This document shows positions 1 to 13,580 of a stretch of DNA of 14,966 bases, in pieces. How positions within the stretch are numbered: the stretch's first letter is position 1; each line of letters begins with the position of its first letter. The notes below the pieces were generated by a model. That model saw only the letters and a program-made list of their open reading frames with translations, searched no databases and was not told the origin of the DNA. Position numbers and translations under genes: made by a program. The stretch lies in IMG/VR virus record IMGVR_UViG_3300005856_000048, positions 1-14,966 of that record; one strand, 5' to 3'.

Positions 1-1898
1 CGTGTGAACCACCTGATGTATGCCCTTATTGCCACGTAGTCTTCCCACAGTTTAGCCCAGTCGTTGGGTATCCTCATTAATTGTATTATTTGCGGTAGCT
101 TATCCATGAATTGGGGTAAGTATTCACTTAACACGGGCATTTCTAAAATGGTGGGGTAGTATGGTGGGGAGTATGCCTTAACTAGGGCATTGGCGAAATC
201 AACGTCTATCCCGTTTGCTAACAATACCTGTAACGCATTCTCAGGTGTTGTTGCATGCCTACCTAGCCATATGCGGGCATAGGTTTCAAAGTTCCTTAGT
301 AAATATCTATGGTAGACTAGATTGGCTATGAATAGGAAGACTTCCCTTGCTTGCGGTGTTTCTCTCATTAACGTTGTTAATTCATCAATGTACTTGGGGA
401 TCTCTGTCTTTGGAATAAGCCCCATGCCTATTATACCCAGGATCCTATACAACGCATACCTTGCGTAGTACCTTATCCTACGGAATGTACCAATCAGTTG
501 CTCTACCTCAAAGTATTTGGCTATGGCGTCGTTGAATGCTGAATCCCAAGTTAGGTGCATTTCCGCACCTGTAATGGATTTGTACAGTGGTGCGTAGTAT
601 TTGTCTAACACAGTTGTGACGTAGCCAACCATATCGTTTATTGAGTCACTGATACCGATCAAGTAGTCTCTGACTCCTGCTAGTAATGCCCTAAACATGT
701 TGCTCATATACGTGTTCACCTTATCCATTAATGCCCTTAGCATTAGTAACTTAGATTCTGGTTCAATGTACCTCACGGGTGCGTTTAACCAACCCGTCAC
801 CCATTTCTGATTATACATGTCAAAGTAGGCTACGTGGACTGATACGGGGAACATGTTGTTCATCATTTGCAATGTGACGGGTATTAACTCTATGTTTTCT
901 CTAATTAGATTCAGCAATCCTGTCCTTAGTAGGGTTTTTGATGCTGTAGTGACGTCAAAGACGGCTCTTAGGGCTATTAATGGGGCTACGTATGGGTGGA
1001 AGCCCCTGGCCATTAACACGTTTGTGACGTAATCAGTGTATATTTGGATTGGTGACGTGGCTTGGGGTTCCACAACCTTACCCAGCACGTCATACATTGT
1101 TGTCTCGTTTGTGATCTTATACTCACGTTCATAGTAGTCCCATATACCATGCCTAACCAGGTGTTCAATGTCGGTTCTGTCTAATAGGTGTGCTGATTGG
1201 TCTATGATTAACCATGCATCGGATGTGTATGATTGACCTGTCCTTGGGTCGTTGATCCATGCAAAGTGAGCTCTACCATGCCATTTCTGATATTCCGCTA
1301 GGGCTAGCAGGGCTAGGTTGTATTGGAAGTTGAGTTTAGCGGGTACCTGTGGGGTGAATGCGTTGATGATTTTAGCTTCAGCTTCCGCAAAGGTTTGGAC
1401 TTCAGGTGGTGGGACATACCAGGCGAATCCCGATAATGCACGCATTGTAAAGTCCCATACCTGGGTTGCTGATGGCAATTCATAAGCCCTTAGGTAGTAC
1501 ATGTAGGCTACGTCGGGTGGAACACCCCTGGCCCACATTGCCTTGACAAACGACTGATATGCTAATGCGGGTTGCTGATTAGGTGGTGCTGATGCAGGTA
1601 GGAATAAGTCCCTTAGCATGAATTCAACCAGGTCGTGGGTAGTGGGTAATTCGAATAGTGGGGCAACAGGTAGGTATCTTACGTTGCCGAATTTATCAAC
1701 CACGGTGATTAAATTGTTTTGTATTTCCTTCCTGTAGTCACTTAATGCCTGGTTGGCAACGTCTATGGATGTGAATGCTGATGGTAATGCTATTGTCTTT
1801 GCAATGAACCAGTATGGGAAGCCTCTATAAATCATTGTATTTGCCACGTTGTTAATGTTCTGTGTGATATCAAACCTACGGGCTATGTCAAGTAATTC
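1..1898 (-). CDS. C-terminal part of the giant minor structural protein (alpha-helical repeats); runs off the left edge
   Basis: Manual translation gives a frame open from 1913 to base 1 (~630 codons): ELLDIARRFDITQNINNVANTMIYRGFPYW...LFELPTTHDLVEFMLRD...YELPSATQVWDFTMR...AIRAYIRWFT. Not in the ORF track, probably because it has no stop in the window. Independent starts are possible (GTG 1847, ATG 1835), but it more likely continues the 774-aa ORF via a -1 shift. Confidence 0.85.
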
Positions 1899-4207
1899 GT
1901 ATGTGACGGTAGTTCAAAGGGCATGTTGCCCATTCCCATTGAGTAGAATGTTAGCCACCACACGTAGCGCCACAGGTAGCGTAGCGGTTCCATGAATGCT
2001 AATGTTCCGCTTAGCGCCATGCCTCTTCCCAATTCATCGCCTAGTTTACCCAATAGATCACCGATTGGTTGTAGTAGTTTCCCTAGTTCTAAACGGATCT
2101 TTAGACCTATGCCTAATGGTGTTAAATCAACTTCCTGTGTCCCAGTTGCTGACCCTATTTTCTCGATTAGTTTCCCTAGGAAGTATATGGATGATGCTAT
2201 TGCGGTTGATATAATAGCCACCGCACCGAATGCGCCTGTTAGGTTTGGTATTGCTACTTTAACGGGGTCTACACCTGACTTTATTACGATGTATGGTTCA
2301 TTTTTGAACACGTCACGTGACATCATAGCGGGTATTTCGGTAATCATCACAGGTAGGAAGATGGCTTTCATTGCACCGTCCACAATACCCTTTGCGAAAT
2401 CCGTTATTCCACTTCCCAAGTTGCCTAAGCCACCTGCTAGCGTTTGCGCTAGTTTAATGAAACCTGAGCCTAGTCCCTGGATTTCATTGACTATCCAGTT
2501 GAATATGTCCTTTAGCGTGTCGTAGAATGACTTAAACGCATTCTCAAACCCCTTGCCGATTGACTCAAATAATTTGATTATTTGTTGCACTACTGGGTTT
2601 TTGCCTAGATTCTCAAAGAACTTGGCTACGTTGCTGAAGAAATCGGTGATTGCCTTGATGTTGATTGTTTTTAGGAAGTCCATGAATGCCTTATACACGG
2701 CGTCAAAGACTTCCTTGGGTATTTGGGATATTGTTTTTGGTAGGTTTTCTATTGCCTTTATGAATCCCTGGAATGACTTATTGATATCATTGAATAGTGT
2801 TTCAAACCCTGAACCTATGGTTCCCAAGTTGCTTACAATTGAACCACTGATTGACGTGAATGTTGCGGTTAATGCATTTGCGAATCCCTGGGCTTCCTTT
2901 ATGAATTTCTCAAAGTTTGACTCAATGCCTTTAACAAATCCCTCAATGTCCTTGCCTAGGGTTGTGAAAAAGCCCGTTACCTTACTGTATGCTTCCTTTC
3001 CGAAATTCTCAATGTCTTTGCCTATTGTTGTAAAGAATGATTCAACGTCTTTAATGAATCCTTGGATGTACTTGCCTGCATCTGTTAATGCACCGTATAT
3101 CATCTTGCCGAATGATTCAACGTCACTGATGAATTGTTTGAAATACTTGCCTGCTGTGTCTATGAAATCGCTAATGTACTTGCCGATTGCCGTGAATGTG
3201 TTCCTTATGTCGTTGCCTATGGTGGTGAACACATTGCTTAACGTGGATGCGAATGACTCAATGCCGTGTAGAATATCCGTTGCTATGTGGGTGAATGTTG
3301 ATTGGACTGTGGATGCGAATGACGTTATTGCGTTGATTGCCGTGGTTATGAATGACTCGATGCGTGGGAATACTATGGATTGTAATACGTGTGCGAATTG
3401 GGATAGTGCGTTTTGTATGGTTGATCCGATTGAGGTTATTGCGTTGATGATACTCGATACTGCATTTTGCACTACACCGCTGATCTGTGTTATGATGCCA
3501 CTTAGCGTTGATGTGAATGATGCGAATGCGGTTTGGATTGTTGATGCAATGCTTGATATTGTTGAAATCACACCTGATAGTGCGTTTTGGATTGATGAAA
3601 CTATGCTTGTTATTGTTGATACTATGCCCGATAGTGTTGATTGGATTGTTGATGATAATTGTGTGGCTAAGCCACCGATTGCCGATGCCAGGTTACTGAA
3701 TTGGCTTGATATTGTCGTTGCAATGCTACTTAAGCTTGATGCCAAGTTACTGAGCCCTGAGCTAACGGTTGATGCAATGCCTGATAATGCCGATGTTATG
3801 CTTGATGCCACGGATTGGAACGTGTTAGCTAAGTTACCTAACCCTGATTGGATTCCGCTTAATGCGCTTGATAATGATGAACTCAATGAGTTTAAAGCCG
3901 ATTGGACTGTTGATGATAGTGTTGATATTCCACTTGATACGTAACTCACGACACTGTTGATTGCGTTTATAACGGGCTGTAGCAATTGCTGAATCCCAGT
4001 TGTAATGTAGTTTGCTAGGTTTGTTAATTGTTGCGCTAGCCAATTTTCTAATTGCCCGATTGGATCAGTTAAGCCACCATATTCAACAATCGCATTGTTG
4101 ATGTCTTCCATTGTTAATTGTGATAATGCCTTCTCAATGATGCCGTTGTTTAGGTTGTTTTGGATTAGGATGCGTATTTCATCGGGATTAAAGAATGGGG
4201 TGTCCAT
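1883..4207 (-). CDS. N-terminal part of giant tape-measure-like / terminal filament protein (774 aa up to the frameshift)
   Basis: Long amphipathic S/T/A/G-rich, then F/K/D/E-rich quasi-repeats (TAGKYFKQFISDVESF / DAGKYIQGFIKDVESF; TIGKDIENFGK / TLGKDIEGFVK), followed by hydrophobic segments. ATG overlaps the upstream stop (TAATG). Confidence 0.8.
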   Translation of the reverse strand: MDTPFFNPDEIRILIQNNLNNGIIEKALSQLTMEDINNAIVEYGGLTDPIGQLENWLAQQLTNLANYITTGIQQLLQPVINAINSVVSYVSSGISTLSSTVQSALNSLSSSLSSALSGIQSGLGNLANTFQSVASSITSALSGIASTVSSGLSNLASSLSSIATTISSQFSNLASAIGGLATQLSSTIQSTLSGIVSTITSIVSSIQNALSGVISTISSIASTIQTAFASFTSTLSGIITQISGVVQNAVSSIINAITSIGSTIQNALSQFAHVLQSIVFPRIESFITTAINAITSFASTVQSTFTHIATDILHGIESFASTLSNVFTTIGNDIRNTFTAIGKYISDFIDTAGKYFKQFISDVESFGKMIYGALTDAGKYIQGFIKDVESFFTTIGKDIENFGKEAYSKVTGFFTTLGKDIEGFVKGIESNFEKFIKEAQGFANALTATFTSISGSIVSNLGTIGSGFETLFNDINKSFQGFIKAIENLPKTISQIPKEVFDAVYKAFMDFLKTINIKAITDFFSNVAKFFENLGKNPVVQQIIKLFESIGKGFENAFKSFYDTLKDIFNWIVNEIQGLGSGFIKLAQTLAGGLGNLGSGITDFAKGIVDGAMKAIFLPVMITEIPAMMSRDVFKNEPYIVIKSGVDPVKVAIPNLTGAFGAVAIISTAIASSIYFLGKLIEKIGSATGTQEVDLTPLGIGLKIRLELGKLLQPIGDLLGKLGDELGRGMALSGTLAFMEPLRYLWRYVWWLTFYSMGMGNMPFELPSHTNYLT

Positions 4208-4493: not shown

Positions 4494-5180
4494 TTATTTG
4501 GATGATCCAGTTGTCGTTTGACCTTGGCTTGGTTGCTGTGTTGGGAAAGGGGATGATGCTGGGGCTATGGTTGTTACTTCCACCTCAGGTGGCTTGGCGT
4601 ATTGTGCAAGTGTAGCCTTTAGTCTATCGCTCATTAATTGACGGATGTCATTATTAACTAACTGGAGACCGTAAAGTGACAGTAGCGTATTCATAAAGTA
4701 AATATTGTTATCAACCTGCTTATTGTAAATGTTTAAGTACCTGTCCTCAGTATAATGCCTATGCATAGTATCCTGTTGAATAAGTGAGAAATACTTATTA
4801 TCCATATCCATAGTGTGACGGGTTGATTCAGCATTGAGAGCCGTGGCTACGTTAAGAGCCGTGGTGGTAGCGGCCACCAACTGATTCATGTTATTAGTCT
4901 GTGAGTTTAGTGCTTGGATTTGGGCTTGGGTTAGCTGGGTTTGGTTGTTTGTGGTGTTGATGGACATGAATATGTAGACACCCAGTGCTATCACCACGGC
5001 TAGGATTAGTATGATGATGCCAGCTGTTATGGGGTCTATGTAGATAACATACCCATTGGATGTTGTTGTGGATTGTGCAAACACTATGTGTGGGTTAGCC
5101 ACCATTAACATGGCTATTATTGACATTACTACCGCTAACTTGCGCTTATCCATGCTTAGGAGACCTGTGAGTGGGTTCAT
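4494..5180 (-). CDS. Membrane protein (228 aa): signal-peptide-like N-terminus, TM helix, Q/N-rich helical region
   Basis: MDKRKLAVVMSIIAMLMVANPHIVFA|QS signal-like segment; hydrophobic ITAGIIILILAVVIALGVYIFMSI; P/T/Q/S-rich tail. Confidence 0.8.
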   Translation of the reverse strand: MNPLTGLLSMDKRKLAVVMSIIAMLMVANPHIVFAQSTTTSNGYVIYIDPITAGIIILILAVVIALGVYIFMSINTTNNQTQLTQAQIQALNSQTNNMNQLVAATTTALNVATALNAESTRHTMDMDNKYFSLIQQDTMHRHYTEDRYLNIYNKQVDNNIYFMNTLLSLYGLQLVNNDIRQLMSDRLKATLAQYAKPPEVEVTTIAPASSPFPTQQPSQGQTTTGSSK

Positions 5181-5206
5181 ATCGTTTTTAATTGACTGTG
5201 TTGTGT

Positions 5207-5219
5207 AATTTATTTTTAA
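5207..5219 (-). promoter_or_regulatory. Conserved promoter motif TTAAAAATAAATT
   Basis: Exact copy, 27 nt upstream of ATG 5180. Confidence 0.75.
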
Positions 5220-5228
5220 TCTGGGTAA

Positions 5229-6005
5229 CTATGGTTTGTTTAGCGGTGTTGGGTAGACCATTGAGCCACTGCACCCTGGGATTCCTGCTTTATCTATGAA
5301 CTGTATTAATAATGCGGGTTCTAGGAGGGCATACTTATCATCACCGTAATTGACAAAGGACTTCCCAACGTCTAAGCCGATTGCGTGTGTTACATAACCC
5401 CAGTATGTGCAATTTAACGTGAGTTTAACATTAACAAGCGCCTTCAAGTCATCCTCAGGCATGTTGGGTGTTGCTAACGCTATGCCTAGGCAATTTTGTT
5501 GGTTAGCGTATAGACAGTTGCCTGCAACGTAGATGGCTCTGGGGTATGGTTCATCGGTTTGGAAGTTGATTGGCGTTGGTGCTTGGAATGTGGCGTAGCC
5601 GTAGTCGTATGGTGACGGTATTTCAATGTTGAAAAAGAGTAGGATGTTCCATATCCATTGTGGGAAGGTGATGGGGTATGTGATTTGAATGTTGCTTAGC
5701 CTGTATGTTGCGTTGCCGTATTGTAAAGTGTCTACGCATTTCATGACATGCCCAGCACTAACAACCGTGTTATTCATTATTTCATAAACTGAGCCACCGC
5801 ATGAACCAGTCAATTTTGGGTATTCACCGTTTGCGTGAAAAAAATCACTCTCACTAATAATAACCTTCCTTCCCTTTTTATCATAGAGTCCATCGGCTTT
5901 TTGAATGAATATTCCCTTGGTTACTAGGTCTTGGATTGTTATGCCGTCCTTAAGCTGAATAACTATGGTTTTGTCTCCTTGGAATAGGGTTTTGAACCGT
6001 GGCAT
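5229..6005 (-). CDS. Chymotrypsin/trypsin-like serine protease (258 aa)
   Basis: SCGGS, VVSAGHV (His86), YDYGY (Asp134) and PGCSGSMVY (Ser246) occur in canonical order and spacing. GGTGA SD at 6009-6013. Confidence 0.75.
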   Translation of the reverse strand: MPRFKTLFQGDKTIVIQLKDGITIQDLVTKGIFIQKADGLYDKKGRKVIISESDFFHANGEYPKLTGSCGGSVYEIMNNTVVSAGHVMKCVDTLQYGNATYRLSNIQITYPITFPQWIWNILLFFNIEIPSPYDYGYATFQAPTPINFQTDEPYPRAIYVAGNCLYANQQNCLGIALATPNMPEDDLKALVNVKLTLNCTYWGYVTHAIGLDVGKSFVNYGDDKYALLEPALLIQFIDKAGIPGCSGSMVYPTPLNKP

Positions 6006-6028
6006 GGTTCACCTTACCCATGCCGTGT

Positions 6029-6041
6029 AATTTATTTTTAA
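6029..6041 (-). promoter_or_regulatory. Conserved promoter motif TTAAAAATAAATT
   Basis: Exact copy, 24 nt upstream of ATG 6005. 6025-6042 is identical over 18 nt to 5203-5220. Confidence 0.75.
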
Positions 6042-6068
6042 TTAAACAATACTACTTGGCTTAACGTT

Positions 6069-7112
6069 TTAATCAATAAGTGATAATGCAATTGTTGGCA
6101 TGATACCGCTTGGTGGTGCGTCGTAAAAGGCAATTGTGTATGTTGTGTAGCTTGATGTTCCACTGCTTGGGTGTCCCGTATAAAATGATACCTGTGTTAA
6201 TGTTGATAATGTAAATGTACTATCTGTGGCTGAGAGAGACTTCCCAGTGAGTGATTCATATGTATACAGGTTTGATGTAGTTGTGTAGTTCCACATGAAA
6301 TAGCCGTAGAATAATTTATTCAGTATGGCGCTGTCACTTACGCTAACTATGCCATTCCATGAGCCATTAACAATCTTTGCCAAGCCATCAGCTGTATTTC
6401 CTACCCCCCACCAGTATGCTTGATATACATTCATGCTACTTGTGTTAATATTATTACCATAGAGGAATCCATATTCAGCGCCACCATTTGTTCCTACACT
6501 GTTTACAAGTGCCCATGTGCGTCCTATGATACCTGTTGATGGTACATTGGATGGTGTTGCTATGAGACCAGTAGAATTCTGGCTACTGGTTACTGTCATT
6601 GTTATCCCGTTGTTTACGCTTATTGTGCCATTACCGTACGTAGTCCATATGCTTGATAGTGTTGTTCCCTTGAAATTATCATAGATTAGGAATACGTTTT
6701 TGCCGTTGTCAAGTTGCCCGTAGGATAAGCCTAGGTAGTTTTGCCCGTAGATTGCGTTAATGCCTGCTATGTTGCCGTCTACTAGTTGTTGCATGGTGTC
6801 TATGATCATGTAAAGCGTGTAGGTGGAATTAGCACCAATGGATGGTGTCTTAACGAACCACCTGTGGTATGCCCCATCATACCCATCATACCATGAGTAT
6901 GCCTGGGTATTTGCCTGTGGGTCATAGAAAATAGTGTTTAGCGGTACCGCATAGGGGTCAATACCAACACCAAGTAGTGAAAGCAAGTAACTATGGTCTA
7001 TTTTGATTTCCTGGACATGTGGGTTTACGGTTGCAGTTGATTGACCGTTTGATATAGTTACCTTGATTACACGCTTCCTAACAGGTAGTATGGTGTATTC
7101 TAGGTCTGGCAT
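6069..7112 (-). CDS. DUF2341-like protein with ConA-like beta-sandwich; putative receptor-binding protein (347 aa)
   Basis: FYDPQANTQAYSWYDG...WFVKTPSIGANSTYTLYM fits the DUF2341 pattern. DNGKNVFLIYDNFKGTTLSSIW is a typical linker into a lectin-like domain. C-terminal PPSGIMP. Confidence 0.7.
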   Translation of the reverse strand: MPDLEYTILPVRKRVIKVTISNGQSTATVNPHVQEIKIDHSYLLSLLGVGIDPYAVPLNTIFYDPQANTQAYSWYDGYDGAYHRWFVKTPSIGANSTYTLYMIIDTMQQLVDGNIAGINAIYGQNYLGLSYGQLDNGKNVFLIYDNFKGTTLSSIWTTYGNGTISVNNGITMTVTSSQNSTGLIATPSNVPSTGIIGRTWALVNSVGTNGGAEYGFLYGNNINTSSMNVYQAYWWGVGNTADGLAKIVNGSWNGIVSVSDSAILNKLFYGYFMWNYTTTSNLYTYESLTGKSLSATDSTFTLSTLTQVSFYTGHPSSGTSSYTTYTIAFYDAPPSGIMPTIALSLID

Positions 7113-7134
7113 TGTGTTTAGTTGATTGGTGATG

Positions 7135-7147
7135 TATTTGTTTTTAA
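7135..7147 (-). promoter_or_regulatory. Promoter motif variant TTAAAAACAAATA
   Basis: 2 mismatches to consensus, 23 nt upstream of ATG 7112. Confidence 0.65.
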
Positions 7148-7151
7148 CCCG

Positions 7152-8933
7152 TCACTGTATGAATCCCTGGGTTAGTGTTGTTGATGGCATGTAGCCCTTG
7201 GGTACAAACTTGGCGTGGTATAGGTTCAGTGGGTTGTTGAACCACACCATTAATGCGTCCTGTGGTGCATCAACGTTAGCGTAGTGTAGGTCAAACCTGT
7301 GGGTTCCGAATGGTATGGTTGCCGTGTATGGTGTTGATTGCATGCTTTGATTTGTCCATGAGCTTAAAATGTTGCTTCCGCCTGATGCCCAATTAGCCCC
7401 ATCACTACCTAACTCACCTGTTAGGCTTAGCCACACGTTGATTGCATCATCAACAAGGACATACATTGTTGATTGTTTACTTGCCTGTACCCAACCGATG
7501 AATTTAGCTAGCCACGTGTAATTGGGGCTTATAGGTGAACCTACACCGCATGAATAGCCTGCTTCCCATGCACTTAACATGTTGGCTTGGCTTGTGCATG
7601 AACTTGATCTACAGTTTGAGTATGAGCCACCGCTTACGGTGCATGGTATTGTGGATGTGAATAGTGATGGTACTGTTTCACAACATTGTTGTAATGTAAC
7701 TGTGAGCGTCCACCCAGTTGAGCTAAACGTAAAGGATTGCGTATTCAAACTTGTTCCAAGCAATGGTTCAACTGTTGGTGAATACGCTACAGGAGGAACG
7801 GTTTGTGATGTGTTAGCCCATATGCTGTATAACAACCCCTGATCCATAATGTTACCGATGTTATCAGTGCTCAATGAACCAGTGATTGTTGAATTAATAC
7901 CGTAATTAACACCGTCAATTGTTGTTGTGTTAGTGGGTATCATGTATATTTGTGTTGATCCACTGTTAAGTTGATTAATCATTGTGTCCGTTGCCTTTAA
8001 CCAAACCACAGCTGTGCCATTGTTGTTTTTTGCATCAACCTCAACCCAGAATGGTACCTTATTCCCACTTGCATCTAGGATGTAAACGTTGCTTAAATCC
8101 TCATTAACGTTAATGTAATTTGACGGTTGAATGGCTATGGGTATTTGCTGGCCACTGGGGTATGTGTAGCCTGGGTTAGTTAATTTAATGACTATGGGTA
8201 GCCACTGTGTCATTGAATTAAGCATTTCATCAATTGCAAGTAGCGCCTCAGTGAGTTTATTCCAATCATGACTAGTCACAATATCGAAAGCTAACTTTCC
8301 GCTCATTTGCATGGGAACGTAGGCAATGGGGTTGAATATGCCTTGTAATTGGGTTGGAACCGTGTAATTGTAGCCGTAAAGGTATGTGAAATAGTAAATG
8401 AACGTGTTGTATGCAAGTAGAATGTGGTTCCAAATTGCATTGTAATGGTCGTGGCTAACTGGGTCACCTACCGTGACGGGTTTAAGCGTGTTCAACATGT
8501 CCATTATCACATTGTACTTTGACGTGAGGTACATTCCCGTGTTTTGATTAACCAGGTTGATTAATTGAATCAGTTGGTAAAGGTATTTGAGTTGGTTAAG
8601 CAGTATGGTGCGCCTATTGTTCCACACGGATGGTGGAATTGTTTGATTGGGGCAATGTGAATAGACTGTTACCCCACCTGAGAGTTGCGAGAAAATGTAG
8701 GGTATTGGGATGCAGACGGGTAGACTAAATGTGATTTTTGAACCAGGGGTTATGACACTCGATAGTGATGGTGGGAGTAGGGATGGTGGTATTGACGTTA
8801 CTACCTGCCTGGTTGGTGTTATTAATGTTTCACTTCCCACTCCTGAATCGCTTAGTGAGAATGCCGTGATTGTGACGCTTACACCACCGCTCGATGCGTC
8901 ACTTGTTACTACTGGATACGCTACGGTGCTCAT
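7152..8933 (-). CDS. Multidomain fibre/adhesin (593 aa): helical repeats, DUF2341, Cys-rich segment, PA14-like domain
   Basis: EDLSNVYILDASGNKVPFWVE...AVVWLK...IYM (DUF2341). AKFIGWV...MYVLVDDAINVWL...GTHRFDLHY...LMVWF (PA14-like, DD at 495-496). Start overlaps the upstream stop (ATGA). Confidence 0.75.
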   Translation of the reverse strand: MSTVAYPVVTSDASSGGVSVTITAFSLSDSGVGSETLITPTRQVVTSIPPSLLPPSLSSVITPGSKITFSLPVCIPIPYIFSQLSGGVTVYSHCPNQTIPPSVWNNRRTILLNQLKYLYQLIQLINLVNQNTGMYLTSKYNVIMDMLNTLKPVTVGDPVSHDHYNAIWNHILLAYNTFIYYFTYLYGYNYTVPTQLQGIFNPIAYVPMQMSGKLAFDIVTSHDWNKLTEALLAIDEMLNSMTQWLPIVIKLTNPGYTYPSGQQIPIAIQPSNYINVNEDLSNVYILDASGNKVPFWVEVDAKNNNGTAVVWLKATDTMINQLNSGSTQIYMIPTNTTTIDGVNYGINSTITGSLSTDNIGNIMDQGLLYSIWANTSQTVPPVAYSPTVEPLLGTSLNTQSFTFSSTGWTLTVTLQQCCETVPSLFTSTIPCTVSGGSYSNCRSSSCTSQANMLSAWEAGYSCGVGSPISPNYTWLAKFIGWVQASKQSTMYVLVDDAINVWLSLTGELGSDGANWASGGSNILSSWTNQSMQSTPYTATIPFGTHRFDLHYANVDAPQDALMVWFNNPLNLYHAKFVPKGYMPSTTLTQGFIQ

Positions 8934-9295
8934 GAACTGAGCACCTGTGTGACAAAGTAATACGGGTAGGATCTTGGTGTGCCACTAATCTGATTGATAG
9001 TTACTTTGATGCCCATGCCTGGTGGGATTTGCAACGTGTGGATTCTTAGGATTGCATTATTAACTGGTCCTGCGAATGTGCGTTGTAGGAACACGTAATA
9101 ATTCGTTCCATCCACTGTAACATAAACCGTGATGGTTGTTATGTCACCGTTTTGCATGTTTTGCAATGATAACCAACCCTCGATGATTGCGTCCGTTTGC
9201 CCACCGCTATATGTGAACACCGTAGTCTCAGTGTTTAAACTACTTAGTGATAATGTTCCGTTGGAATAACTGATTGAGTTTATTACAACTGGCAT
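8930..9295 (-). CDS. Beta-strand-rich hypothetical structural protein (121 aa)
   Basis: GGTGGTGA SD at 9299-9306; alternating hydrophobic beta pattern; coupled to the adhesin gene. Confidence 0.8.
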   Translation of the reverse strand: MPVVINSISYSNGTLSLSSLNTETTVFTYSGGQTDAIIEGWLSLQNMQNGDITTITVYVTVDGTNYYVFLQRTFAGPVNNAILRIHTLQIPPGMGIKVTINQISGTPRSYPYYFVTQVLSS

Positions 9296-9305
9296 GGTTC
9301 ACCAC

Positions 9306-9773
9306 CTATGAGATGCTTAGCGTCATTGTTACTTGCCATGTTTCACCAGGTTGCTTAATACCCATGTTTGCAACTAACCTATCGATCGGTATGTATCCGC
9401 AATTTTGCCCAACGTAGTTTGTAATGGCAACTGCTATTTCGTTCCATTGGAAGTTAGCCATTGTGTCCGTGAATGTTGCCGTGACGGATAGTTGATTATT
9501 GTTTATTGAAACTTGCCCAGGGCTTGAGCATGATTGGATTGAGCCCTGGAGACATGTTTGACTTGCCGATGCGGGTGTTGAACCGTTCCCAACGCATATG
9601 CCCAACGTGACGTTTGTTATGCTACCCACAACAATGTACCAAATTATTTCAACACCGTATGTGAGGAAGATATTACCCTCATAATGCTCAATTGACTTTA
9701 CTACACCGTTCCTATCCTTTTTAACAATGGTTACCTTTGCGGTTCCTTTACCGCTTTCACTATGGCTTACCAT
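9306..9773 (-). CDS. Protein resembling phage tail-collar/baseplate fibre-attachment domain (DUF3751-like), 155 aa
   Basis: Motif series NIFLTYG...ICVGNGSTPASASQTCL...ATFTDTMANFQWNEIAV...DRLVANMGIKQPGETWQVTMTLSI. GGTGA SD at 9780-9784. Confidence 0.6.
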   Translation of the reverse strand: MVSHSESGKGTAKVTIVKKDRNGVVKSIEHYEGNIFLTYGVEIIWYIVVGSITNVTLGICVGNGSTPASASQTCLQGSIQSCSSPGQVSINNNQLSVTATFTDTMANFQWNEIAVAITNYVGQNCGYIPIDRLVANMGIKQPGETWQVTMTLSIS

Positions 9774-9784
9774 TACCCGTCACC

Positions 9785-10426
9785 TCAGTTGCATGTTGAT
9801 GAATTTGTTAATTCCAACAATGCCCTAACGTAGCTGTAGTTCTCTGATCTCAGATAGATCTGGATGGCATCGCAAACGTCTATTTCAATTTGTGTTCCTG
9901 GGAAGATTGGGAAGTGTTGCCCACTTGCCCCACCCACGTAGACCACATAGGTCGTGTCCTGTGTGACATACAGTAGTGCACGCTTGATGGGTGTGCTTGT
10001 ACTTACTAACGATGTTGCCGTGGATAACACGGGTACTACAATGCTCATTAATGCGGTTGGTGAAACATACAGTTTAATTTTCTGAACCGTTTGCTGTACC
10101 TGTTGGACTGTGTTTTGAATGTTAATCAAATAGACTGAAATGTAATTGTAGATTTGATTGATTGCACCCTGCAAAAATTGAGCAATGTAGATGGGATCCA
10201 GGTCATGCAATACCTTATACCCTTCCACGTAAATCTCGTTTCCAAAGAATGCTGATCCAGCTGTGTATAATTCATCAAAGTATGGTGTGAATTGACCGTT
10301 TGTTAGGATGATGTTTGTGTAGTAATTCATTGTGTAGAGTTGATCCACGGCTGACACTAATGCATTCCAATCCGATGAACGCAATACCTGGAATGGCTGT
10401 TTGAATGGTACTCCGAATACGCTCAT
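9785..10426 (-). CDS. Hypothetical fibre-like structural protein (213 aa): SSDWNAL motif, short coiled coil, C-terminal beta domain
   Basis: First gene of a 4-gene unit with the 13-mer 25 nt upstream; INIQNTVQQVQQTVQKIK heptad segment. Confidence 0.75.
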   Translation of the reverse strand: MSVFGVPFKQPFQVLRSSDWNALVSAVDQLYTMNYYTNIILTNGQFTPYFDELYTAGSAFFGNEIYVEGYKVLHDLDPIYIAQFLQGAINQIYNYISVYLINIQNTVQQVQQTVQKIKLYVSPTALMSIVVPVLSTATSLVSTSTPIKRALLYVTQDTTYVVYVGGASGQHFPIFPGTQIEIDVCDAIQIYLRSENYSYVRALLELTNSSTCN

Positions 10427-10450
10427 AGCGTTGTAAAATTGAATAAAACT

Positions 10451-10463
10451 AATTTATTTTTAA
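10451..10463 (-). promoter_or_regulatory. Conserved promoter motif TTAAAAATAAATT
   Basis: Exact copy, 25 nt upstream of ATG 10426. Confidence 0.75.
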
Positions 10464-10478
10464 CCAGAATGAGGGGTG

Positions 10479-10784
10479 TTACTTAGCCCCTAACACATCC
10501 CTCAGTTCCTTAACCTTTTGGACTATTTTGCGTGCTTGCTTAACTACAGGGTGGTTAAGTAGATTGGGGTCATCTAGTGATGCTAATTCCAGGGATAAGT
10601 TGTATGCCTCAGTGACTAATTCCATTAGTTTATCTGTGAATGCCTTGGCTTTGGGGTCTATTGTTTGTTGTTGTAGTGATACATTGGGGATGACTGGGGT
10701 TGTTGTTGGTGTTGGTGGTGTTGTTATGGTGGGTGTCACAATGGACTGTCCTGTCCCTTGAACCCTGGTATCGGACTCAGACAT
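10479..10784 (-). CDS. Hypothetical protein (101 aa): T/P-rich N-terminus and helical hairpin
   Basis: TPTITTPPTPTTTP followed by two amphipathic helices; overlaps the 439-aa gene by 49 nt; TATA box 26 nt upstream. Confidence 0.75.
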   Translation of the reverse strand: MSESDTRVQGTGQSIVTPTITTPPTPTTTPVIPNVSLQQQTIDPKAKAFTDKLMELVTEAYNLSLELASLDDPNLLNHPVVKQARKIVQKVKELRDVLGAK

Positions 10785-12055
10785 ACCGTGCTAAGTAGAT
10801 TAAGCAGGGTATTTAAAGTACTCGGATCTAAACCAAAATTAACCCATTTACTTAGCCATGCCTGGTTGAATGCCTGTAATCCTATGCCTTCCCATGCCCT
10901 GTACCTAACCCTATCGTGATTGTGGTGGAATGCCATGCAGTATTCTACACCTGCATCCTCATATGCGTTAATCAAAAATGGGTTAGCCACCTTGTTCATC
11001 AACATGTTTCTGATTGTTTTTCTAATTGTTTTGATTAATTCCATTGCCCTACCCCACCTTTCCGCACGTGCTGTCAATGGTGCGAATGGTGCGTTTTCAA
11101 TAATGCCTGGGAATGCTTCCTGGAATAATTCCACTAAACTTGGTGGAATAGGTATGTTGGGTATTGCTGGGTCTATGAATGCCGTCTTAATCGCCGTTTG
11201 CAATGGTGAATAATTGTTTTGGACGGCTTCACCAATGCGCCCCACTAACCGTGCGAAATTGAGATTAACCATTGGAACGGGTTCATCAATGAAATACTCA
11301 CCATCCAGGGGGTTCCAATCCAGGACAGTACCCCATAATGCCTGGTCTATCACGGCAAAATGCGGGTATGCGGTTTTTCCGTTTAGTTCACTGATTGTTG
11401 TTAGCCATTGATAAGGCAACACAACATACAGTGGGTTGGTTACGGATTCTGGGGCGAATTGCGAGAAATCAAGTATCATGACGTCCATTGGTGTGGATTT
11501 CTCAATAATCTGCATCACAGTGTTCAACATCTTATTAGCGTAGATGGAAAATCCCTGGTTCACATCCACACCTTGCAAAAATGATGGGGTTGTCATGTTG
11601 CGTGAAACCTTGTTGATTGCTGAACGTAACCATTGCTTAATGTTCACTACCGTGAGCCCTGGATCATAGTAACTATAATCGAATACTGATTGACCGAATA
11701 TAGCCTTTGTGATTTGAGTCTGACTGTAGTTGCTTTGAGCTTCTGGGGCTACAACCGTGATGTTTGGAATGCTAAATGGTGAAATGTTTAGGCTTTGCAG
11801 GTAGTTTGAGAAATCTGGGAATGTGATGTTTATGCCCTGCCACGTGAAATCATCAAACTGGATTGGTACACCTAATGAGATTGCGAATAGGAAGTCTAAC
11901 AATAGTGATGTTTCCATTTCAAAGTTGAATGGGAAGAATTGTATCGTGACACGGCTTGGTAGTACCGTGACGTCTTGCTTATTATTCAGGGTAACCTTAG
12001 CCTGGTGTACACCACCCGTCCCAAAGAGATTATAACTTTGGACTGGGGTGGCCAT
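10736..12055 (-). CDS. Minor virion protein (439 aa) with probable C-terminal MCP-like helical domain
   Basis: Starts 3 nt after the glycosyltransferase stop; AIFGQSVFDYSYYDP motif; C-terminus aligns by eye with the MCP (FGLDPSTLNTL vs YGANPTILQAI). Confidence 0.7.
   Translation of the reverse strand: MATPVQSYNLFGTGGVHQAKVTLNNKQDVTVLPSRVTIQFFPFNFEMETSLLLDFLFAISLGVPIQFDDFTWQGINITFPDFSNYLQSLNISPFSIPNITVVAPEAQSNYSQTQITKAIFGQSVFDYSYYDPGLTVVNIKQWLRSAINKVSRNMTTPSFLQGVDVNQGFSIYANKMLNTVMQIIEKSTPMDVMILDFSQFAPESVTNPLYVVLPYQWLTTISELNGKTAYPHFAVIDQALWGTVLDWNPLDGEYFIDEPVPMVNLNFARLVGRIGEAVQNNYSPLQTAIKTAFIDPAIPNIPIPPSLVELFQEAFPGIIENAPFAPLTARAERWGRAMELIKTIRKTIRNMLMNKVANPFLINAYEDAGVEYCMAFHHNHDRVRYRAWEGIGLQAFNQAWLSKWVNFGLDPSTLNTLLNLLSTVCLSPIPGFKGQDSPL
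10810..10817 (-). promoter_or_regulatory. Canonical archaeal TATA box TTTAAATA inside the 439-aa gene
   Basis: 26 nt upstream of ATG 10784, the same spacing as the other promoters. Confidence 0.45.
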
Positions 12056-12058
12056 TGG

Positions 12059-13108
12059 CTACTCGATGTATTTAACTATTTTAGAGTATAAATTTGTAAT
12101 CGTCATGTCTTTCACGGTATCGTAAGCACGCTTAGCCCTTTCCTCATATTCACCGCTCTTAGCCATATCCACGGCATTAACTATGGCATCGGCTAGGTAC
12201 TGTGGGTCATAGTCATGTAACTCGAATTCTACACCGTTATCAACAATTTCCTTAATGTTATCCCATGGGAAGGTAATGTTGGCTTTAACATCAGCAAACT
12301 CATTGAATGGTTCCATGTTCACGAAAATGGCTAATCTACCTAATGAGTTTGCTTCCAAGACGGGTAGTCCAAATCCTTCCGCAAGCGATGGAACTAGTAC
12401 ATAATCCGCTAGTTTGAATAAGGCAAGGACTTGTTTCCTTGCCATTTGCCCGAATTGCCCCACAACGTAAATTGAATCCTTTGGGGCGTTGGGTAGGACT
12501 TTTTCCATGGTGGGTTTGTCGGCTATGGCAAGTACAATAAACTTTGACCTAACATTCTCGGGTATTTTGTTTAATGCATCAACTAGTTTATGCCAACCCT
12601 TGCGTAGGTGGGATCCTTCCGCTATTGCGAAAATTACCTTGCCTGGGAAGTCACGTTCAATCTTTTTCCTTAGGAATTCGGCATACTCGGTGGCTTCCCT
12701 GTTTTCATCGGGATCATATGCATGGTGGACAATATCCAAAACGTGGTAACCCACCTCACTTAGCTTGTTTGCTGTGTACATCGAGTTTGCGATAAAGTCA
12801 ATGTTGTACCACACGGGGTATCGGGATGGTTCACCATAGGGTGTACCTTCCGTTGTCCCATACCATGCTTGTTTAAGTGATTTTGCGTAGATTTTGTTTG
12901 TTGAATATTGCCCAGCATACCTACCACTCATGGTGGTATTGACAGGGAAAATCCATAGGATGGCGTTTGGACGGTAGAAAAGGAAGTCCTGGTGGATGTA
13001 GTCACTCGATACTTTCACGTCATGCCCCATTGCCCTTGCCACTTTGGCGATGTGTGAGGCTACTATGCTTAGGCTTGGTGCTTTAGCGTGTACAATCATT
13101 AATTTCAT
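12059..13108 (-). CDS. GT4 (GT-B fold) glycosyltransferase (349 aa)
   Basis: FIANS, LRKGW and ADYVLVPSLAEGFGLPVLEA (EX7E signature); adjacent to the MCP gene. Confidence 0.93.
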   Translation of the reverse strand: MKLMIVHAKAPSLSIVASHIAKVARAMGHDVKVSSDYIHQDFLFYRPNAILWIFPVNTTMSGRYAGQYSTNKIYAKSLKQAWYGTTEGTPYGEPSRYPVWYNIDFIANSMYTANKLSEVGYHVLDIVHHAYDPDENREATEYAEFLRKKIERDFPGKVIFAIAEGSHLRKGWHKLVDALNKIPENVRSKFIVLAIADKPTMEKVLPNAPKDSIYVVGQFGQMARKQVLALFKLADYVLVPSLAEGFGLPVLEANSLGRLAIFVNMEPFNEFADVKANITFPWDNIKEIVDNGVEFELHDYDPQYLADAIVNAVDMAKSGEYEERAKRAYDTVKDMTITNLYSKIVKYIE

Positions 13109-13168: not shown

Positions 13169-13555
13169 TTAGTATGATAGACCGCTAACACCCAATGCCT
13201 GGGCAATGGCCTGTAGTATGGTTGGGTTAGCACCGTAAGCGGTCTGGAAGTAAGACGTGAGACCGTTCACCTCATTGGCAAGTGCTGGACCTGTGATACG
13301 TTGTGTCGCATGCCAAACCTTTTCACCAAAGGCTATGTAAACGGCTCTAGTTGGGCCAGCTACACCATACTGATCGAGTATGCCACCTACCAGGAACTGT
13401 ACATTTGCAACGCTTACTATACCCTCCTGTGCCCTGCTTACGGCAACTGGCTGTACTTCAGTGAACCTGGTTTGAACTACTGTAGGGTCGTATTTGGCCT
13501 GCCACTTAGCGAGCCTTGCATTTCCTGGCTTGGGTAAGCCCCTACCCCTGGCCAT
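13169..13555 (-). CDS. Major capsid protein, SIRV2-type alpha-helical fold (128 aa from ATG 13555)
   Basis: MARG...RLAKWQAKY-DPTV...ILDQYGVAGPTRAVYIAFGEKV...GPALANEVNGL...AYGANPTILQAI parallels the recalled SIRV coat protein (RYAKWQAKF...VLTQYGITGPNRAIYQGFGLKV...GPALVNMINGL...AFNANPQVL). ATG 13555 is preferred over the track's TTG 13564. Confidence 0.93.
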   Translation of the reverse strand: MARGRGLPKPGNARLAKWQAKYDPTVVQTRFTEVQPVAVSRAQEGIVSVANVQFLVGGILDQYGVAGPTRAVYIAFGEKVWHATQRITGPALANEVNGLTSYFQTAYGANPTILQAIAQALGVSGLSY

Positions 13556-13580
13556 ATTGGTCAAAAACCTTATCCGCCAT

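What the first reader, a model, noticed from the sequence alone, without database searches (positions are those of the whole stretch)
6069..8204. Tandem DUF2341 adhesins with exchangeable lectin cassettes between conserved anchors
Seen: both proteins share the DUF2341 core, a linker (DGVNYGIN...DNIGNIM vs DGNIAGIN...DNGKNVF) and a C-terminal motif (VPKGYMPS vs PPSGIMPT). The sequences in between are unrelated: Cys-rich plus PA14-like in one, ConA-like in the other. Inference: a fixed scaffold with a swappable inserted glycan-binding domain, giving dual receptor specificity and a host-range diversification mechanism.
Basis: partly seen in the sequence, partly recalled or inferred. Interest (0 to 1): 0.65.

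Follow-up and report, generated by a model that had tools for sequence, protein, structure and literature searches.

The report
Swappable lectin heads on rudivirus adhesins
Two neighbouring genes of a hot-spring rod-shaped archaeal virus encode probable attachment proteins with the same base domain but different sugar-binding heads, and near-identical viruses carry unrelated versions of one head, as tailed phages do when they change host specificity.

Summary
The window is a 15-kb metagenomic fragment of a rudivirus-like archaeal virus. P0001 (6069-7112, minus strand, 347 aa) and P0002 (7152-8933, minus strand, 593 aa) share a DUF2341 beta-sandwich plus linker (profile-profile E 7e-13). Their heads have different folds. 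In high-confidence AlphaFold models, P0001 has a ConA-like lectin jelly roll (Z 17) and P0002 has a PA14 domain (Z 10-11) with a Cys-rich insertion. Both proteins end in a PxGxMP tail. The same tail closes ConA-type and PA14-type DUF2341 units in SIRV ORF564 proteins and in giant multi-unit metagenomic proteins.

The "swappable cassette" idea is supported for P0001. Contigs about 90% identical to the window lose all DNA similarity across the head only, with sharp junctions next to the conserved linker motifs. Six cassette classes sit on N-domains that reach 99% identity between classes. Alternative cassettes co-occur in the same hot-spring metagenomes.

P0002 exchanges only a segment of about 47 aa. 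ConA and PA14 units already sit side by side in cellular-size proteins, so the ConA/PA14 difference between the two paralogues is probably old.

Receptor binding, dual specificity and the tail packing onto DUF2341 remain inferences. This is a new variant of the modular receptor-binding proteins known from phages.

The parts
7152..8933 (-). P0002 gene, 593 aa: N-terminal domain, DUF2341 sandwich, linker, PA14 head, tail
   Evidence: ORF list and translation; 8 close homologues of 51-95% identity; same gene order in L003-L006 and L010
8208..8933 (-). P0002 N-terminal domain (aa 1-242); not modelled; presumed virion or fibre anchor
   Evidence: Conserved in the family. No Pfam or PHROG hit. No detectable homology to the SIRV ORF564 N-domain. 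No usable Atlas hit. The anchoring role is inference.
7899..8207 (-). P0002 DUF2341 beta-sandwich (aa 243-345)
   Evidence: Pfam DUF2341 19 bits in hmmscan and 22.2 bits in the genome scan, both under the 23.4 cut-off; homologous to P0001 11-173 at E 6.8e-13; strands in the model
7851..7898 (-). P0002 linker (aa 346-361); the conserved motifs DGVNYGIN (340-347) and DNIGNIM (357-363) straddle its two ends
   Evidence: Translation; invariant in the family; conserved in distant relatives
7209..7850 (-). P0002 PA14 head (aa 362-575) with a Cys-rich insertion and an invariant DD at 495-496
   Evidence: VIA Z 9.3-10.9 to PA14 lectins and RsgI3, Foldseek probability 1.0; weak sequence hit to the RsgI3 PA14 domain, E 0.0023; the insertion is specific to the viral family
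7668..7809 (-). P0002 variable mini-cassette (aa about 375-423) inside the PA14 head
   Evidence: P0004 and P0008 are 47-67% identical here against mostly 77-100% in the flanks. Metagenome contigs join 7667 to 7807/7810 with a skipped stretch whose content the tool does not give, in three runs.
7155..7208 (-). P0002 tail (aa 576-593) with VPKGYMPS and a terminal strand at 584-587
6069..7112 (-). P0001 gene, 347 aa: short invariant N-peptide, DUF2341 sandwich, linker, ConA-like head, tail
   Evidence: 56 homologues; phrog_7548 E 8.4e-13; matches SIRV2 ORF564 residues 221-439
6798..7076 (-). P0001 DUF2341 beta-sandwich (aa 13-105)
   Evidence: Model strands at pLDDT above 90; profile link; 60-99% identity across cassette classes
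6693..6797 (-). P0001 linker (aa 106-140) with DGNIAGIN and DNGKNVF; the 5' recombination junctions lie at about aa 118 (just after DGNIAGIN) and about aa 148-150 (a few residues beyond DNGKNVF)
6120..6692 (-). P0001 ConA-like lectin head (aa 141-331)
   Evidence: VIA Z 17.2 to CBM66 and the galactocerebrosidase lectin domain, 16.9 to the phage TM4 gp23 receptor-binding domain; Foldseek probability 1.0 to legume lectins
6117..6662 (-). Cassette replaced in L004 (aa about 151-332)
   Evidence: BLASTN finds 90.6% identity up to 6663, nothing in between, and 90.0% again from 6116. Sliding identity shows the same.
6064..6756 (-). Larger cassette replaced in L005 and L006 (aa about 119 to the stop)
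   Evidence: 90.7% identity up to 6757 and 91% from 6063. Contig loose ends at 6042 and 6805 in hot-spring runs.
6072..6119 (-). P0001 tail (aa 332-347) with PPSGIMPT and a terminal strand at 340-346
   Evidence: kept at 75% identity across the class 1 to class 3 swap

Best explanation
The two genes encode minor virion proteins of a rudivirus-like rod-shaped virus. They are relatives of the SIRV2 ORF564 structural protein and probably act as lectin-type attachment proteins at the virion termini.

Each is built from a conserved DUF2341 beta-sandwich and linker (the base), a distal carbohydrate-binding head, and a short PxGxMP tail. The head is ConA-like in P0001 and PA14 in P0002. The heads probably bind glycans on the host surface, such as glycosylated pili or the S-layer.

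The head of P0001 is replaced as a block of about 550-690 nt. The likely route is ordinary homologous recombination between co-circulating relatives, with crossovers in the conserved linker upstream and in the tail or the next gene downstream. This yields at least six sequence classes on one backbone. P0002 varies only in a patch of about 47 aa in its PA14 head.

Shown here: the architecture, the folds (on predicted models), the cassette replacement and the population polymorphism. Inferred: virion location, glycan binding, any effect on host range, and the recombination mechanism.
For: Virus identity: the window carries a rudiviral major capsid protein (40-44% identity) and glycosyltransferases.

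Family link: P0001 matches phrog_7548 and the C-terminal half of SIRV2 ORF564. The SIRV3 homologue is annotated as a structural protein, and in SIRV3 it lies next to a gene annotated coiled-coil structural protein.

Architecture and folds. The nearest structures include phage receptor-binding and baseplate carbohydrate modules (TM4 gp23, J-1 Dit, Douge), lectins and fungal or bacterial PA14 adhesins.

Cassette exchange: DNA identity of about 90% drops to background only across the head, with sharp edges. P0011 and P0040 are 99% identical in the N-domain, 18% in the cassette and 75% in the tail.

Population level: window-type contigs and contigs that diverge at 6042 or 6805 occur in the same hot-spring runs.

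No dedicated diversifying machinery: no repeats, reverse transcriptase or invertase were found.

Family-wide frame: ConA-type and PA14-type units both end in YPPNGxMPS within single large proteins.
Against: There is no experimental evidence that either protein is in the virion or binds sugar.

ConA-like folds also include lyases and glycoside hydrolases, which score Z 13-15.

Pfam DUF2341 and PA14 models do not reach their thresholds on these two proteins.

P0001 lacks the roughly 240-aa N-terminal domain present in ORF564 and P0002, so how it would be held on the virion is unknown.

The fold of the commonest alternative cassette (class 2) was not determined. It aligns with class 1 only over the first 52 residues.

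The read-laying tool warns against ranking by contig depth. Only contig positions and loose ends were used as evidence.
Confidence: 0.65

Rival explanations
1. There is no exchange relevant to the pair. P0001 and P0002 are simply old paralogues of a family whose units always carry the linker and tail motifs, and the shared anchors are family hallmarks rather than recombination sockets.
For: The shared region shows only about 19% identity in the profile alignment. ConA-type and PA14-type units with the same tail coexist in large metagenomic proteins. The P0002 head is stable in all 8 relatives.
Against: This explains the ConA versus PA14 difference. It does not explain the block replacement in P0001 between genomes that are 90% identical.
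Confidence: 0.3
2. The heads are enzymes, not adhesins. They would be glycan lyases or hydrolases of the ConA-like clan that cut host surface polysaccharide during entry.
For: Alginate, glucuronan and ulvan lyases and GH16 enzymes match the P0001 head at Z 13-15. Tailed phages commonly carry depolymerases, by general knowledge.
Against: The best matches are non-catalytic lectins and carbohydrate-binding modules at Z 16-17. PA14 is a binding module in all top hits. No catalytic motif was examined.
Confidence: 0.12
3. The mosaic pattern is an artefact of metagenome assembly, with chimeric contigs joining different strains or genes.
For: All relatives are metagenomic contigs. Logan contigs are short.
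Against: The same cassette classes recur in independent samples and assemblers: JGI 3300045881, 3300017696 (two contigs) and IMG/VR 3300033781. Eleven class-2 proteins were found. All keep intact frames of 338-350 aa, and junctions fall at the same places.
Confidence: 0.03
4. The variability comes from a dedicated diversifying system, either a diversity-generating retroelement or an invertible shufflon.
For: Such systems are reported in some archaeal viruses (cited in 10.1101/2020.01.16.907410).
Against: The window has no template or inverted repeats touching 6069-8204. No reverse transcriptase or invertase was found in the window or among the ORFs scanned in the 20-kb relative L003. The cassettes are non-homologous blocks, not point-mutated copies.
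Confidence: 0.03

Closest known systems
SIRV2 ORF564 (gp39) and its rudiviral homologues; the SIRV3 homologue is annotated as a structural protein
   Same: DUF2341 followed by a region homologous to P0001 (28-38% identity), with the YDNGxNVF linker motif and a YPPNGVMPS tail. In SIRV3 the gene lies next to one annotated coiled-coil structural protein.
   Different: ORF564 is a single protein of about 565-582 aa with its own N-terminal domain. Here that layout is split: P0001 has no N-domain, and P0002 has an N-domain of similar length, not detectably related, plus a PA14 head. No function or cassette exchange for ORF564 turned up in the papers searched.
Modular receptor-binding proteins of tailed phages (conserved N-terminal anchor, exchangeable C-terminal head)
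   Same: Conserved base, block replacement of the distal head between near-identical genomes, and lectin or carbohydrate-binding-module folds. Structural neighbours include the TM4 gp23 receptor-binding domain, J-1 Dit CBM2 and the Douge baseplate.
   Different: This is an archaeal rod-shaped virus of the realm Adnaviria. The base is DUF2341. In some swaps the replaced block is internal and a C-terminal tail is retained.
ConA1/ConA2 lectin proteins of Thermococcales spindle-shaped viruses (PMC12934983)
   Same: Two lectin-domain proteins per genome, one conserved and one highly variable, with replacement of lectin domains between related viruses.
   Different: A different virus group and different protein architecture: multi-lectin transmembrane proteins with no DUF2341 frame and no PA14. 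Those conclusions rest on predicted structures, as here.
DUF2341-containing proteins of archaea and bacteria (with Laminin_G_3; proposed pilus-tip adhesins, PMC4858521)
   Same: The same unit of DUF2341 plus a ConA/LamG-like head. Archaeal and unassigned metagenomic relatives also carry PA14-type units with the same tail.
   Different: Those are large, often multi-unit proteins. Here the units are single-unit viral proteins that undergo cassette replacement.
PA14 lectin domains (Flo5, Epa1/6/9, Cea1, Marinomonas MpPA14, RsgI3)
   Same: The fold (Z 9-11), the sDDg-like signature with an invariant DD, and adhesin use.
   Different: No Pfam PA14 hit. There is a viral-specific Cys-rich insertion. 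Calcium and sugar site residues were not verified.

Membership tests
Pfam DUF2341 (PF10102) | HMM score at or above the gathering cut-off of 23.4 bits | tested here: not met
   P0001 scores 14.4 bits. P0002 scores 19 bits in hmmscan and 22.2 bits in the genome scan.
Pfam DUF2341 (PF10102) | Homology to bona fide members, shown through profiles or intermediate sequences | tested here: met
   Homologues pass the cut-off: P0017 (precomputed), P0072 28 bits, P0094 33.3 bits, and SIRV/SBRV ORF564 26.7-35 bits. The two family profiles align at E 6.8e-13.
ConA-like lectin/glucanase fold (P0001 aa 141-331) | Two-sheet jelly roll superposable on lectins or LamG | tested here: met
   VIA Z up to 17.2 with 162-190 aligned residues at rmsd 2.9-3.7 among the top hits. 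Foldseek probability 1.0. The test used a predicted model of pLDDT 93.
ConA-like lectin/glucanase fold (P0001 aa 141-331) | Sugar or metal binding site and actual glycan binding | not testable with these tools
   No coordinates or residue-level superpositions are returned. A glycan array or co-crystal is needed.
PA14 domain (P0002 aa 362-575) | Pfam PA14/GLEYA HMM match | tested here: not met
   No PA14 hit in Pfam. A family profile gives only a weak hit to the RsgI3 PA14 domain, E 0.0023.
PA14 domain (P0002 aa 362-575) | PA14 beta-barrel fold | tested here: met
   VIA Z 10.9 (RsgI3), 10.3 (RTX adhesin PA14), 10.2 (Cea1A), 9.9 (MpPA14), 9.5 (Epa6A) and 9.3 (Flo5A). Foldseek probability 1.0.
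PA14 domain (P0002 aa 362-575) | Two-Asp calcium and sugar site of lectin-type PA14 (recalled from the literature, not checked here) | tested here: inconclusive
   DD at 495-496 is invariant in the family and nearly so in distant relatives. It aligns with the TDDG of RsgI3. Structural equivalence to the lectin site was not checked.
Rudiviral ORF564 family (phrog_7548) | Profile match | tested here: met
   P0001 matches at E 8.4e-13 over profile positions 240-580 of 591. P0002 has no PHROG hit.
Rudiviral ORF564 family (phrog_7548) | Presence in purified virions | not testable with these tools
   This is a metagenomic contig without an isolate. The only support is the 'structural protein' annotation of the SIRV3 homologue.
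Modular (cassette-exchanging) viral receptor-binding protein | Conserved anchor, unrelated heads, and sharp breakpoints between near-identical genomes | tested here: met
Modular (cassette-exchanging) viral receptor-binding protein | The head determines adsorption or host range | not testable with these tools
   Needs a cultured virus-host pair.
Diversity-generating retroelement or shufflon target | Reverse transcriptase with template repeat, or invertase with inverted repeats | tested here: not met
   The window and L003 are incomplete genomes.

The most novel reading that the evidence does not exclude
The DUF2341 sandwich, its DGxNxGIN...DNxxN linker and the YPPNGxMPS tail may form a general archaeal 'socket'. 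Unrelated lectin folds (ConA-like or PA14) would sit in it as an inserted domain, with the tail strand folding back onto the base. Because the socket is conserved in protein and DNA, it would also serve as the recombination landing pad that lets cells (pilus-tip adhesins) and several archaeal virus families trade glycan-binding heads.
Probability: 0.3. Interest if true: 0.72.

Novelty: new variant of a known kind. Interest (0 to 1): 0.55.

Why it matters
Little is known about how rod-shaped archaeal viruses recognise their hosts. In the papers read here, the terminal fibres are said to mediate host recognition for SIRV2. SIRV2 P1070 is thought to form the terminal filaments.

One comparative study of rudiviruses suggested that genetic drift, not a dedicated mechanism, diversifies their host-recognition module (10.1101/2020.01.16.907410). 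This locus points to the ORF564 family as lectin-type attachment proteins. It also shows block exchange of the head between co-circulating viruses.

That gives concrete, expressible candidates for glycan-binding tests, and a way to read host-specificity variation in hot-spring viromes. It also assigns a structural role to DUF2341: a base that carries alternative lectin heads.

Tried and rejected
- BLASTN and TBLASTN of the region and of P0002 against the phage collection found nothing.
- BLASTP of P0001 against P0002, and of P0002 against SIRV2 ORF564, gave no significant match.
- The shallow profile comparison A1 against A2 was not significant (E 0.23). Only the deeper profiles worked.
- The P0002 N-domain could not be tied to the ORF564 N-domain (E 0.067 over 25 columns). 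The Atlas feature search on it gave no usable hit.
- Sequence searches of solved structures with the P0001 family and with the class-2 cassette gave nothing meaningful.
- The class-2 cassette aligns with class 1 only over the first 52 residues, so its fold remains undetermined.
- A search with only the P0001 cassette (aa 151-331) found it on no other scaffold.
- The pairing partner of the tail strand could not be read because model coordinates are not exposed. The only hint is that GH38 mannosidase beta-domains align about 100-113 residues spanning model positions 3/5 to 358. I treat this as inconclusive.
- Complex prediction was not used. I make no binding claim between the two proteins.
- Literature searches for SIRV2 P564 or ORF564 returned no paper naming it.
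- A diversity-generating retroelement or shufflon was considered and rejected.
Full report
**What the window is.** The window is a 14,966-bp linear IMG/VR viral contig. Nearly all long ORFs lie on the minus strand. It encodes a rudivirus-type major capsid protein at 13169-13564, 40-44% identical to the capsid proteins of SIRV, ARV and SSRV1 (phrog_7510). It also encodes two GT4 glycosyltransferases. A long coiled-coil protein matches tape-measure-like profiles. It occupies the place that a gene annotated coiled-coil structural protein holds next to the DUF2341 gene in SIRV3.

Close syntenic relatives are L004, L005 and L006, at about 90% DNA identity. L003 is about 71% identical. L010, on a contig labelled as a Thermoproteus sp. 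MAG, is more distant. Public runs that hold the sequence are mainly hot-spring metagenomes. The host is not identified.

**Checking the observation.** Direct comparison is not significant: BLASTP gives E 2.9, and Pfam DUF2341 is below its cut-off in both.

I collected 56 homologues of P0001 and 8 of P0002. An exhaustive profile search added distant P0002 relatives. With these, the family profiles align at probability 97.8% and E 6.8e-13 over P0001 11-173 and P0002 240-405. The alignment ends exactly where the heads begin. The shared core plus linker is therefore real homology, at about 19% identity.

**Folds.** AlphaFold models built on these alignments are confident: P0001 has pLDDT 93.2 and pTM 0.89, and P0002 236-593 has pLDDT 89.7 and pTM 0.89.

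- P0001 has a seven-strand sandwich (13-105), a linker with a short strand and a helix (106-140), a jelly roll of about 15 strands (141-331) and a final strand (340-346).
- The P0001 jelly roll matches legume and L-type lectins in Foldseek (probability 1.0).
- In VIA-align it matches the galactocerebrosidase lectin domain and CBM66 (Z 17.2) and the receptor-binding domain of phage TM4 gp23 (Z 16.9).
- It also matches phage J-1 Dit CBM2 (Z 16.6) and ERGIC-53 (Z 16.2).
- P0002 362-575 matches PA14 domains: RsgI3 Z 10.9, RTX-adhesin PA14 10.3, Cea1A 10.2, MpPA14 9.9, Epa6A 9.5 and Flo5A 9.3. Foldseek gives probability 1.0 to Flo5, Epa and MpPA14.
- A family profile also touches the RsgI3 PA14 sequence weakly (E 0.0023).
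- Compared with distant relatives, the viral P0002 family has an extra Cys-rich segment inside the PA14 domain.

**The anchors across the family.** The tail motif lies near the C-terminus in most members of both families and in the ORF564 proteins of SIRV2, SIRV3, SIRV4 and SBRV1.

Large metagenomic proteins such as P0071, P0076 and P0082 contain several DUF2341 units. Other PA14-type relatives in the same set carry Parvarchaeum and Micrarchaeota MAG names. In the large proteins some units end in W-x-R-x-R-x-YPPNGxMPS, the flavour seen in the ORF564 proteins. Others end in YYH/S-x-x-YPPNGxMPS, the PA14 flavour.

So "DUF2341, then a head of either fold, then the tail" is a family-wide frame. 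It also shows that the ConA/PA14 alternative is old. It does not arise from a recent swap between the two window genes.

**Cassette exchange in P0001.**

- Along the P0001 family, residues 1-150 stay 60-96% identical. Residues about 175-325 fall to 4-28% in several groups of the same total length.
- Clustering the cassette at 35% identity gives six classes. Between classes the N-domain can be 86-99% identical while the cassette is 16-21%. The clearest pair is P0011 and P0040: N-domain 99%, cassette 18%, tail 75%.
- At the DNA level, L004 is 90.6% identical to the window from 13112 to 6663. It shows no similarity from 6662 to 6117, and is 90.0% identical again from 6116 on.
- L005 and L006 are 90.7% identical up to 6757 and 91% from 6063 on, so they replace the tail as well.
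- Sliding 45-nt windows show the drops at about residue 148 (L004) and about residue 118 (L005). These lie a few residues after the DNGKNVF motif and directly after the DGNIAGIN motif.
- Class 1 and class 3 cassettes are still homologous (hhalign E 2e-16). Class 2 aligns only over the first 52 residues.
- The window-type cassette was found on no other scaffold.

**Population evidence.** Contigs from four hot-spring runs were laid on 5000-9000. They include pieces that cover the window-type cassette, for example record 18 of run X3 over 6035-6671. They also include pieces that match the flanks and then run into unlike sequence, at 6042 (X3, X4, X10) and at 6805 (X1, X4). Those are the junctions of the L005 type. 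The tool warns against reading depth, so I rely on contig positions and loose ends only.

**P0002 varies much less.** Its eight relatives are collinear. P0004 and P0008 differ sharply only in residues about 361-420 (47-67% identity against mostly 77-100% in the flanks). Metagenome contigs in three runs join 7667 to 7807/7810 with a skipped stretch whose content the tool does not give. That region is residues about 375-423. P0002 therefore has a small variable patch inside its PA14 head, not whole-head exchange.

**Mechanism.** No direct or inverted repeats touch the region. No reverse transcriptase or invertase appears in the window or in the scanned ORFs of L003. The likeliest mechanism is therefore homologous recombination between co-infecting relatives through the conserved flanks. 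A study of rudiviruses had suggested drift as the main source of diversity in their host-recognition module (10.1101/2020.01.16.907410). Block exchange is an addition to that view.

**Function.** Three things point to attachment proteins at the virion termini:
- the lectin and PA14 folds;
- the resemblance to phage receptor-binding modules;
- the link to the ORF564 family, whose SIRV3 member is annotated as a structural protein and lies beside a gene annotated coiled-coil structural protein.

This is inference. Enzymatic ConA-like relatives score only slightly lower (Z 13-15). P0001 has no N-terminal anchoring domain, only an invariant MPD-x-E start. The P0002 N-domain has no recognisable relatives.

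**What could not be tested.** I could not test whether the tail strand pairs with the DUF2341 sandwich, because model coordinates are not returned. Most ConA and PA14 superpositions end before the tail. GH38 beta-domains align about 100-113 residues spread from the first to the last residue of the P0002 model. Both facts fit the tail belonging to the base, but they do not show it. Glycan binding, dual specificity and host-range effects need experiments.

**Comparison and verdict.** The closest known proteins are the rudiviral ORF564 proteins. They share the unit and the tail, but each is a single gene with its own N-domain, and I found no described function or exchange for them.

The closest known behaviour is head exchange in the receptor-binding proteins of tailed phages. 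A second parallel is the conserved-plus-variable lectin pair recently described in Thermococcales spindle viruses (PMC12934983).

I class this as a new variant of a known kind. Interest is 0.55.

Noticed in passing
window 3-1847 (-) and 1883-4207 (-); L003 14679-18995: The 774-aa and 615-aa ORFs align to residues 8-623 (41% identity) and 642-1255 (86% identity) of a single 1438-aa ORF in L003. In the window they are separated by a stop and a change of frame. This could be a true split, a frameshift or an assembly error. The N-terminal coiled-coil part is far more divergent than the C-terminal part.
   Followed up: partly
window 2550-3930: There are imperfect direct repeats spaced mostly 66-120 nt apart inside the 774-aa coiled-coil gene. 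They suggest repeated helical modules of about 37-40 aa.
   Followed up: no
window 9306-9773 (-): This 155-aa protein (phrog_23653) has homologues of 29-32% identity in Bacillus phage SP-15, Listeria phage LIS04 and Methanobacterium virus PhiF1. That is an unusual spread between bacterial and archaeal viruses.
   Followed up: no
window 5229-6005 (-): The 258-aa protein just downstream of P0001 is conserved in all relatives. It has a weak, sub-threshold Pfam hit to the N-terminal domain of filamentous-phage coat protein A (E 0.03). This was not verified.
   Followed up: no
L010 (JAWDOR010000029.1, labelled Thermoproteus sp. MAG) 10001-12094: In this more distant syntenic relative, the gene after the P0002 homologue (P0067) is not a P0001 homologue. 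The P0001 homologue P0060 carries a locus tag of the same MAG (RXR02) and the same longest-contig length, so it probably lies elsewhere on that contig. Both proteins have degenerate tails.
   Followed up: partly
L004 4579-5961: The P0002 homologue in L004 is called as only 460 aa, although the DNA is collinear with the window at 90% identity. This could be a start-site or frameshift difference in its N-terminal domain.
   Followed up: no
L012 3492-5150, L013 3515-5464, L011 628-2199: SIRV4, SIRV3 and SBRV1 carry a second large ORF (552, 649 and 523 aa) next to their ORF564 homologue, where SIRV2 has ORF309. None has a DUF2341 hit. One has a DUF4097 hit.
   Followed up: partly
L015 626-4138 (AFV9 ORF1170); L014 622-3534 (SMV2 gp11): P0001-like DUF2341 units also sit inside giant proteins of a lipothrixvirus and a bicaudavirus. 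SMV2 keeps the YDNGQNVF linker motif. Neither shows the PxGxMP tail in the part examined.
   Followed up: partly
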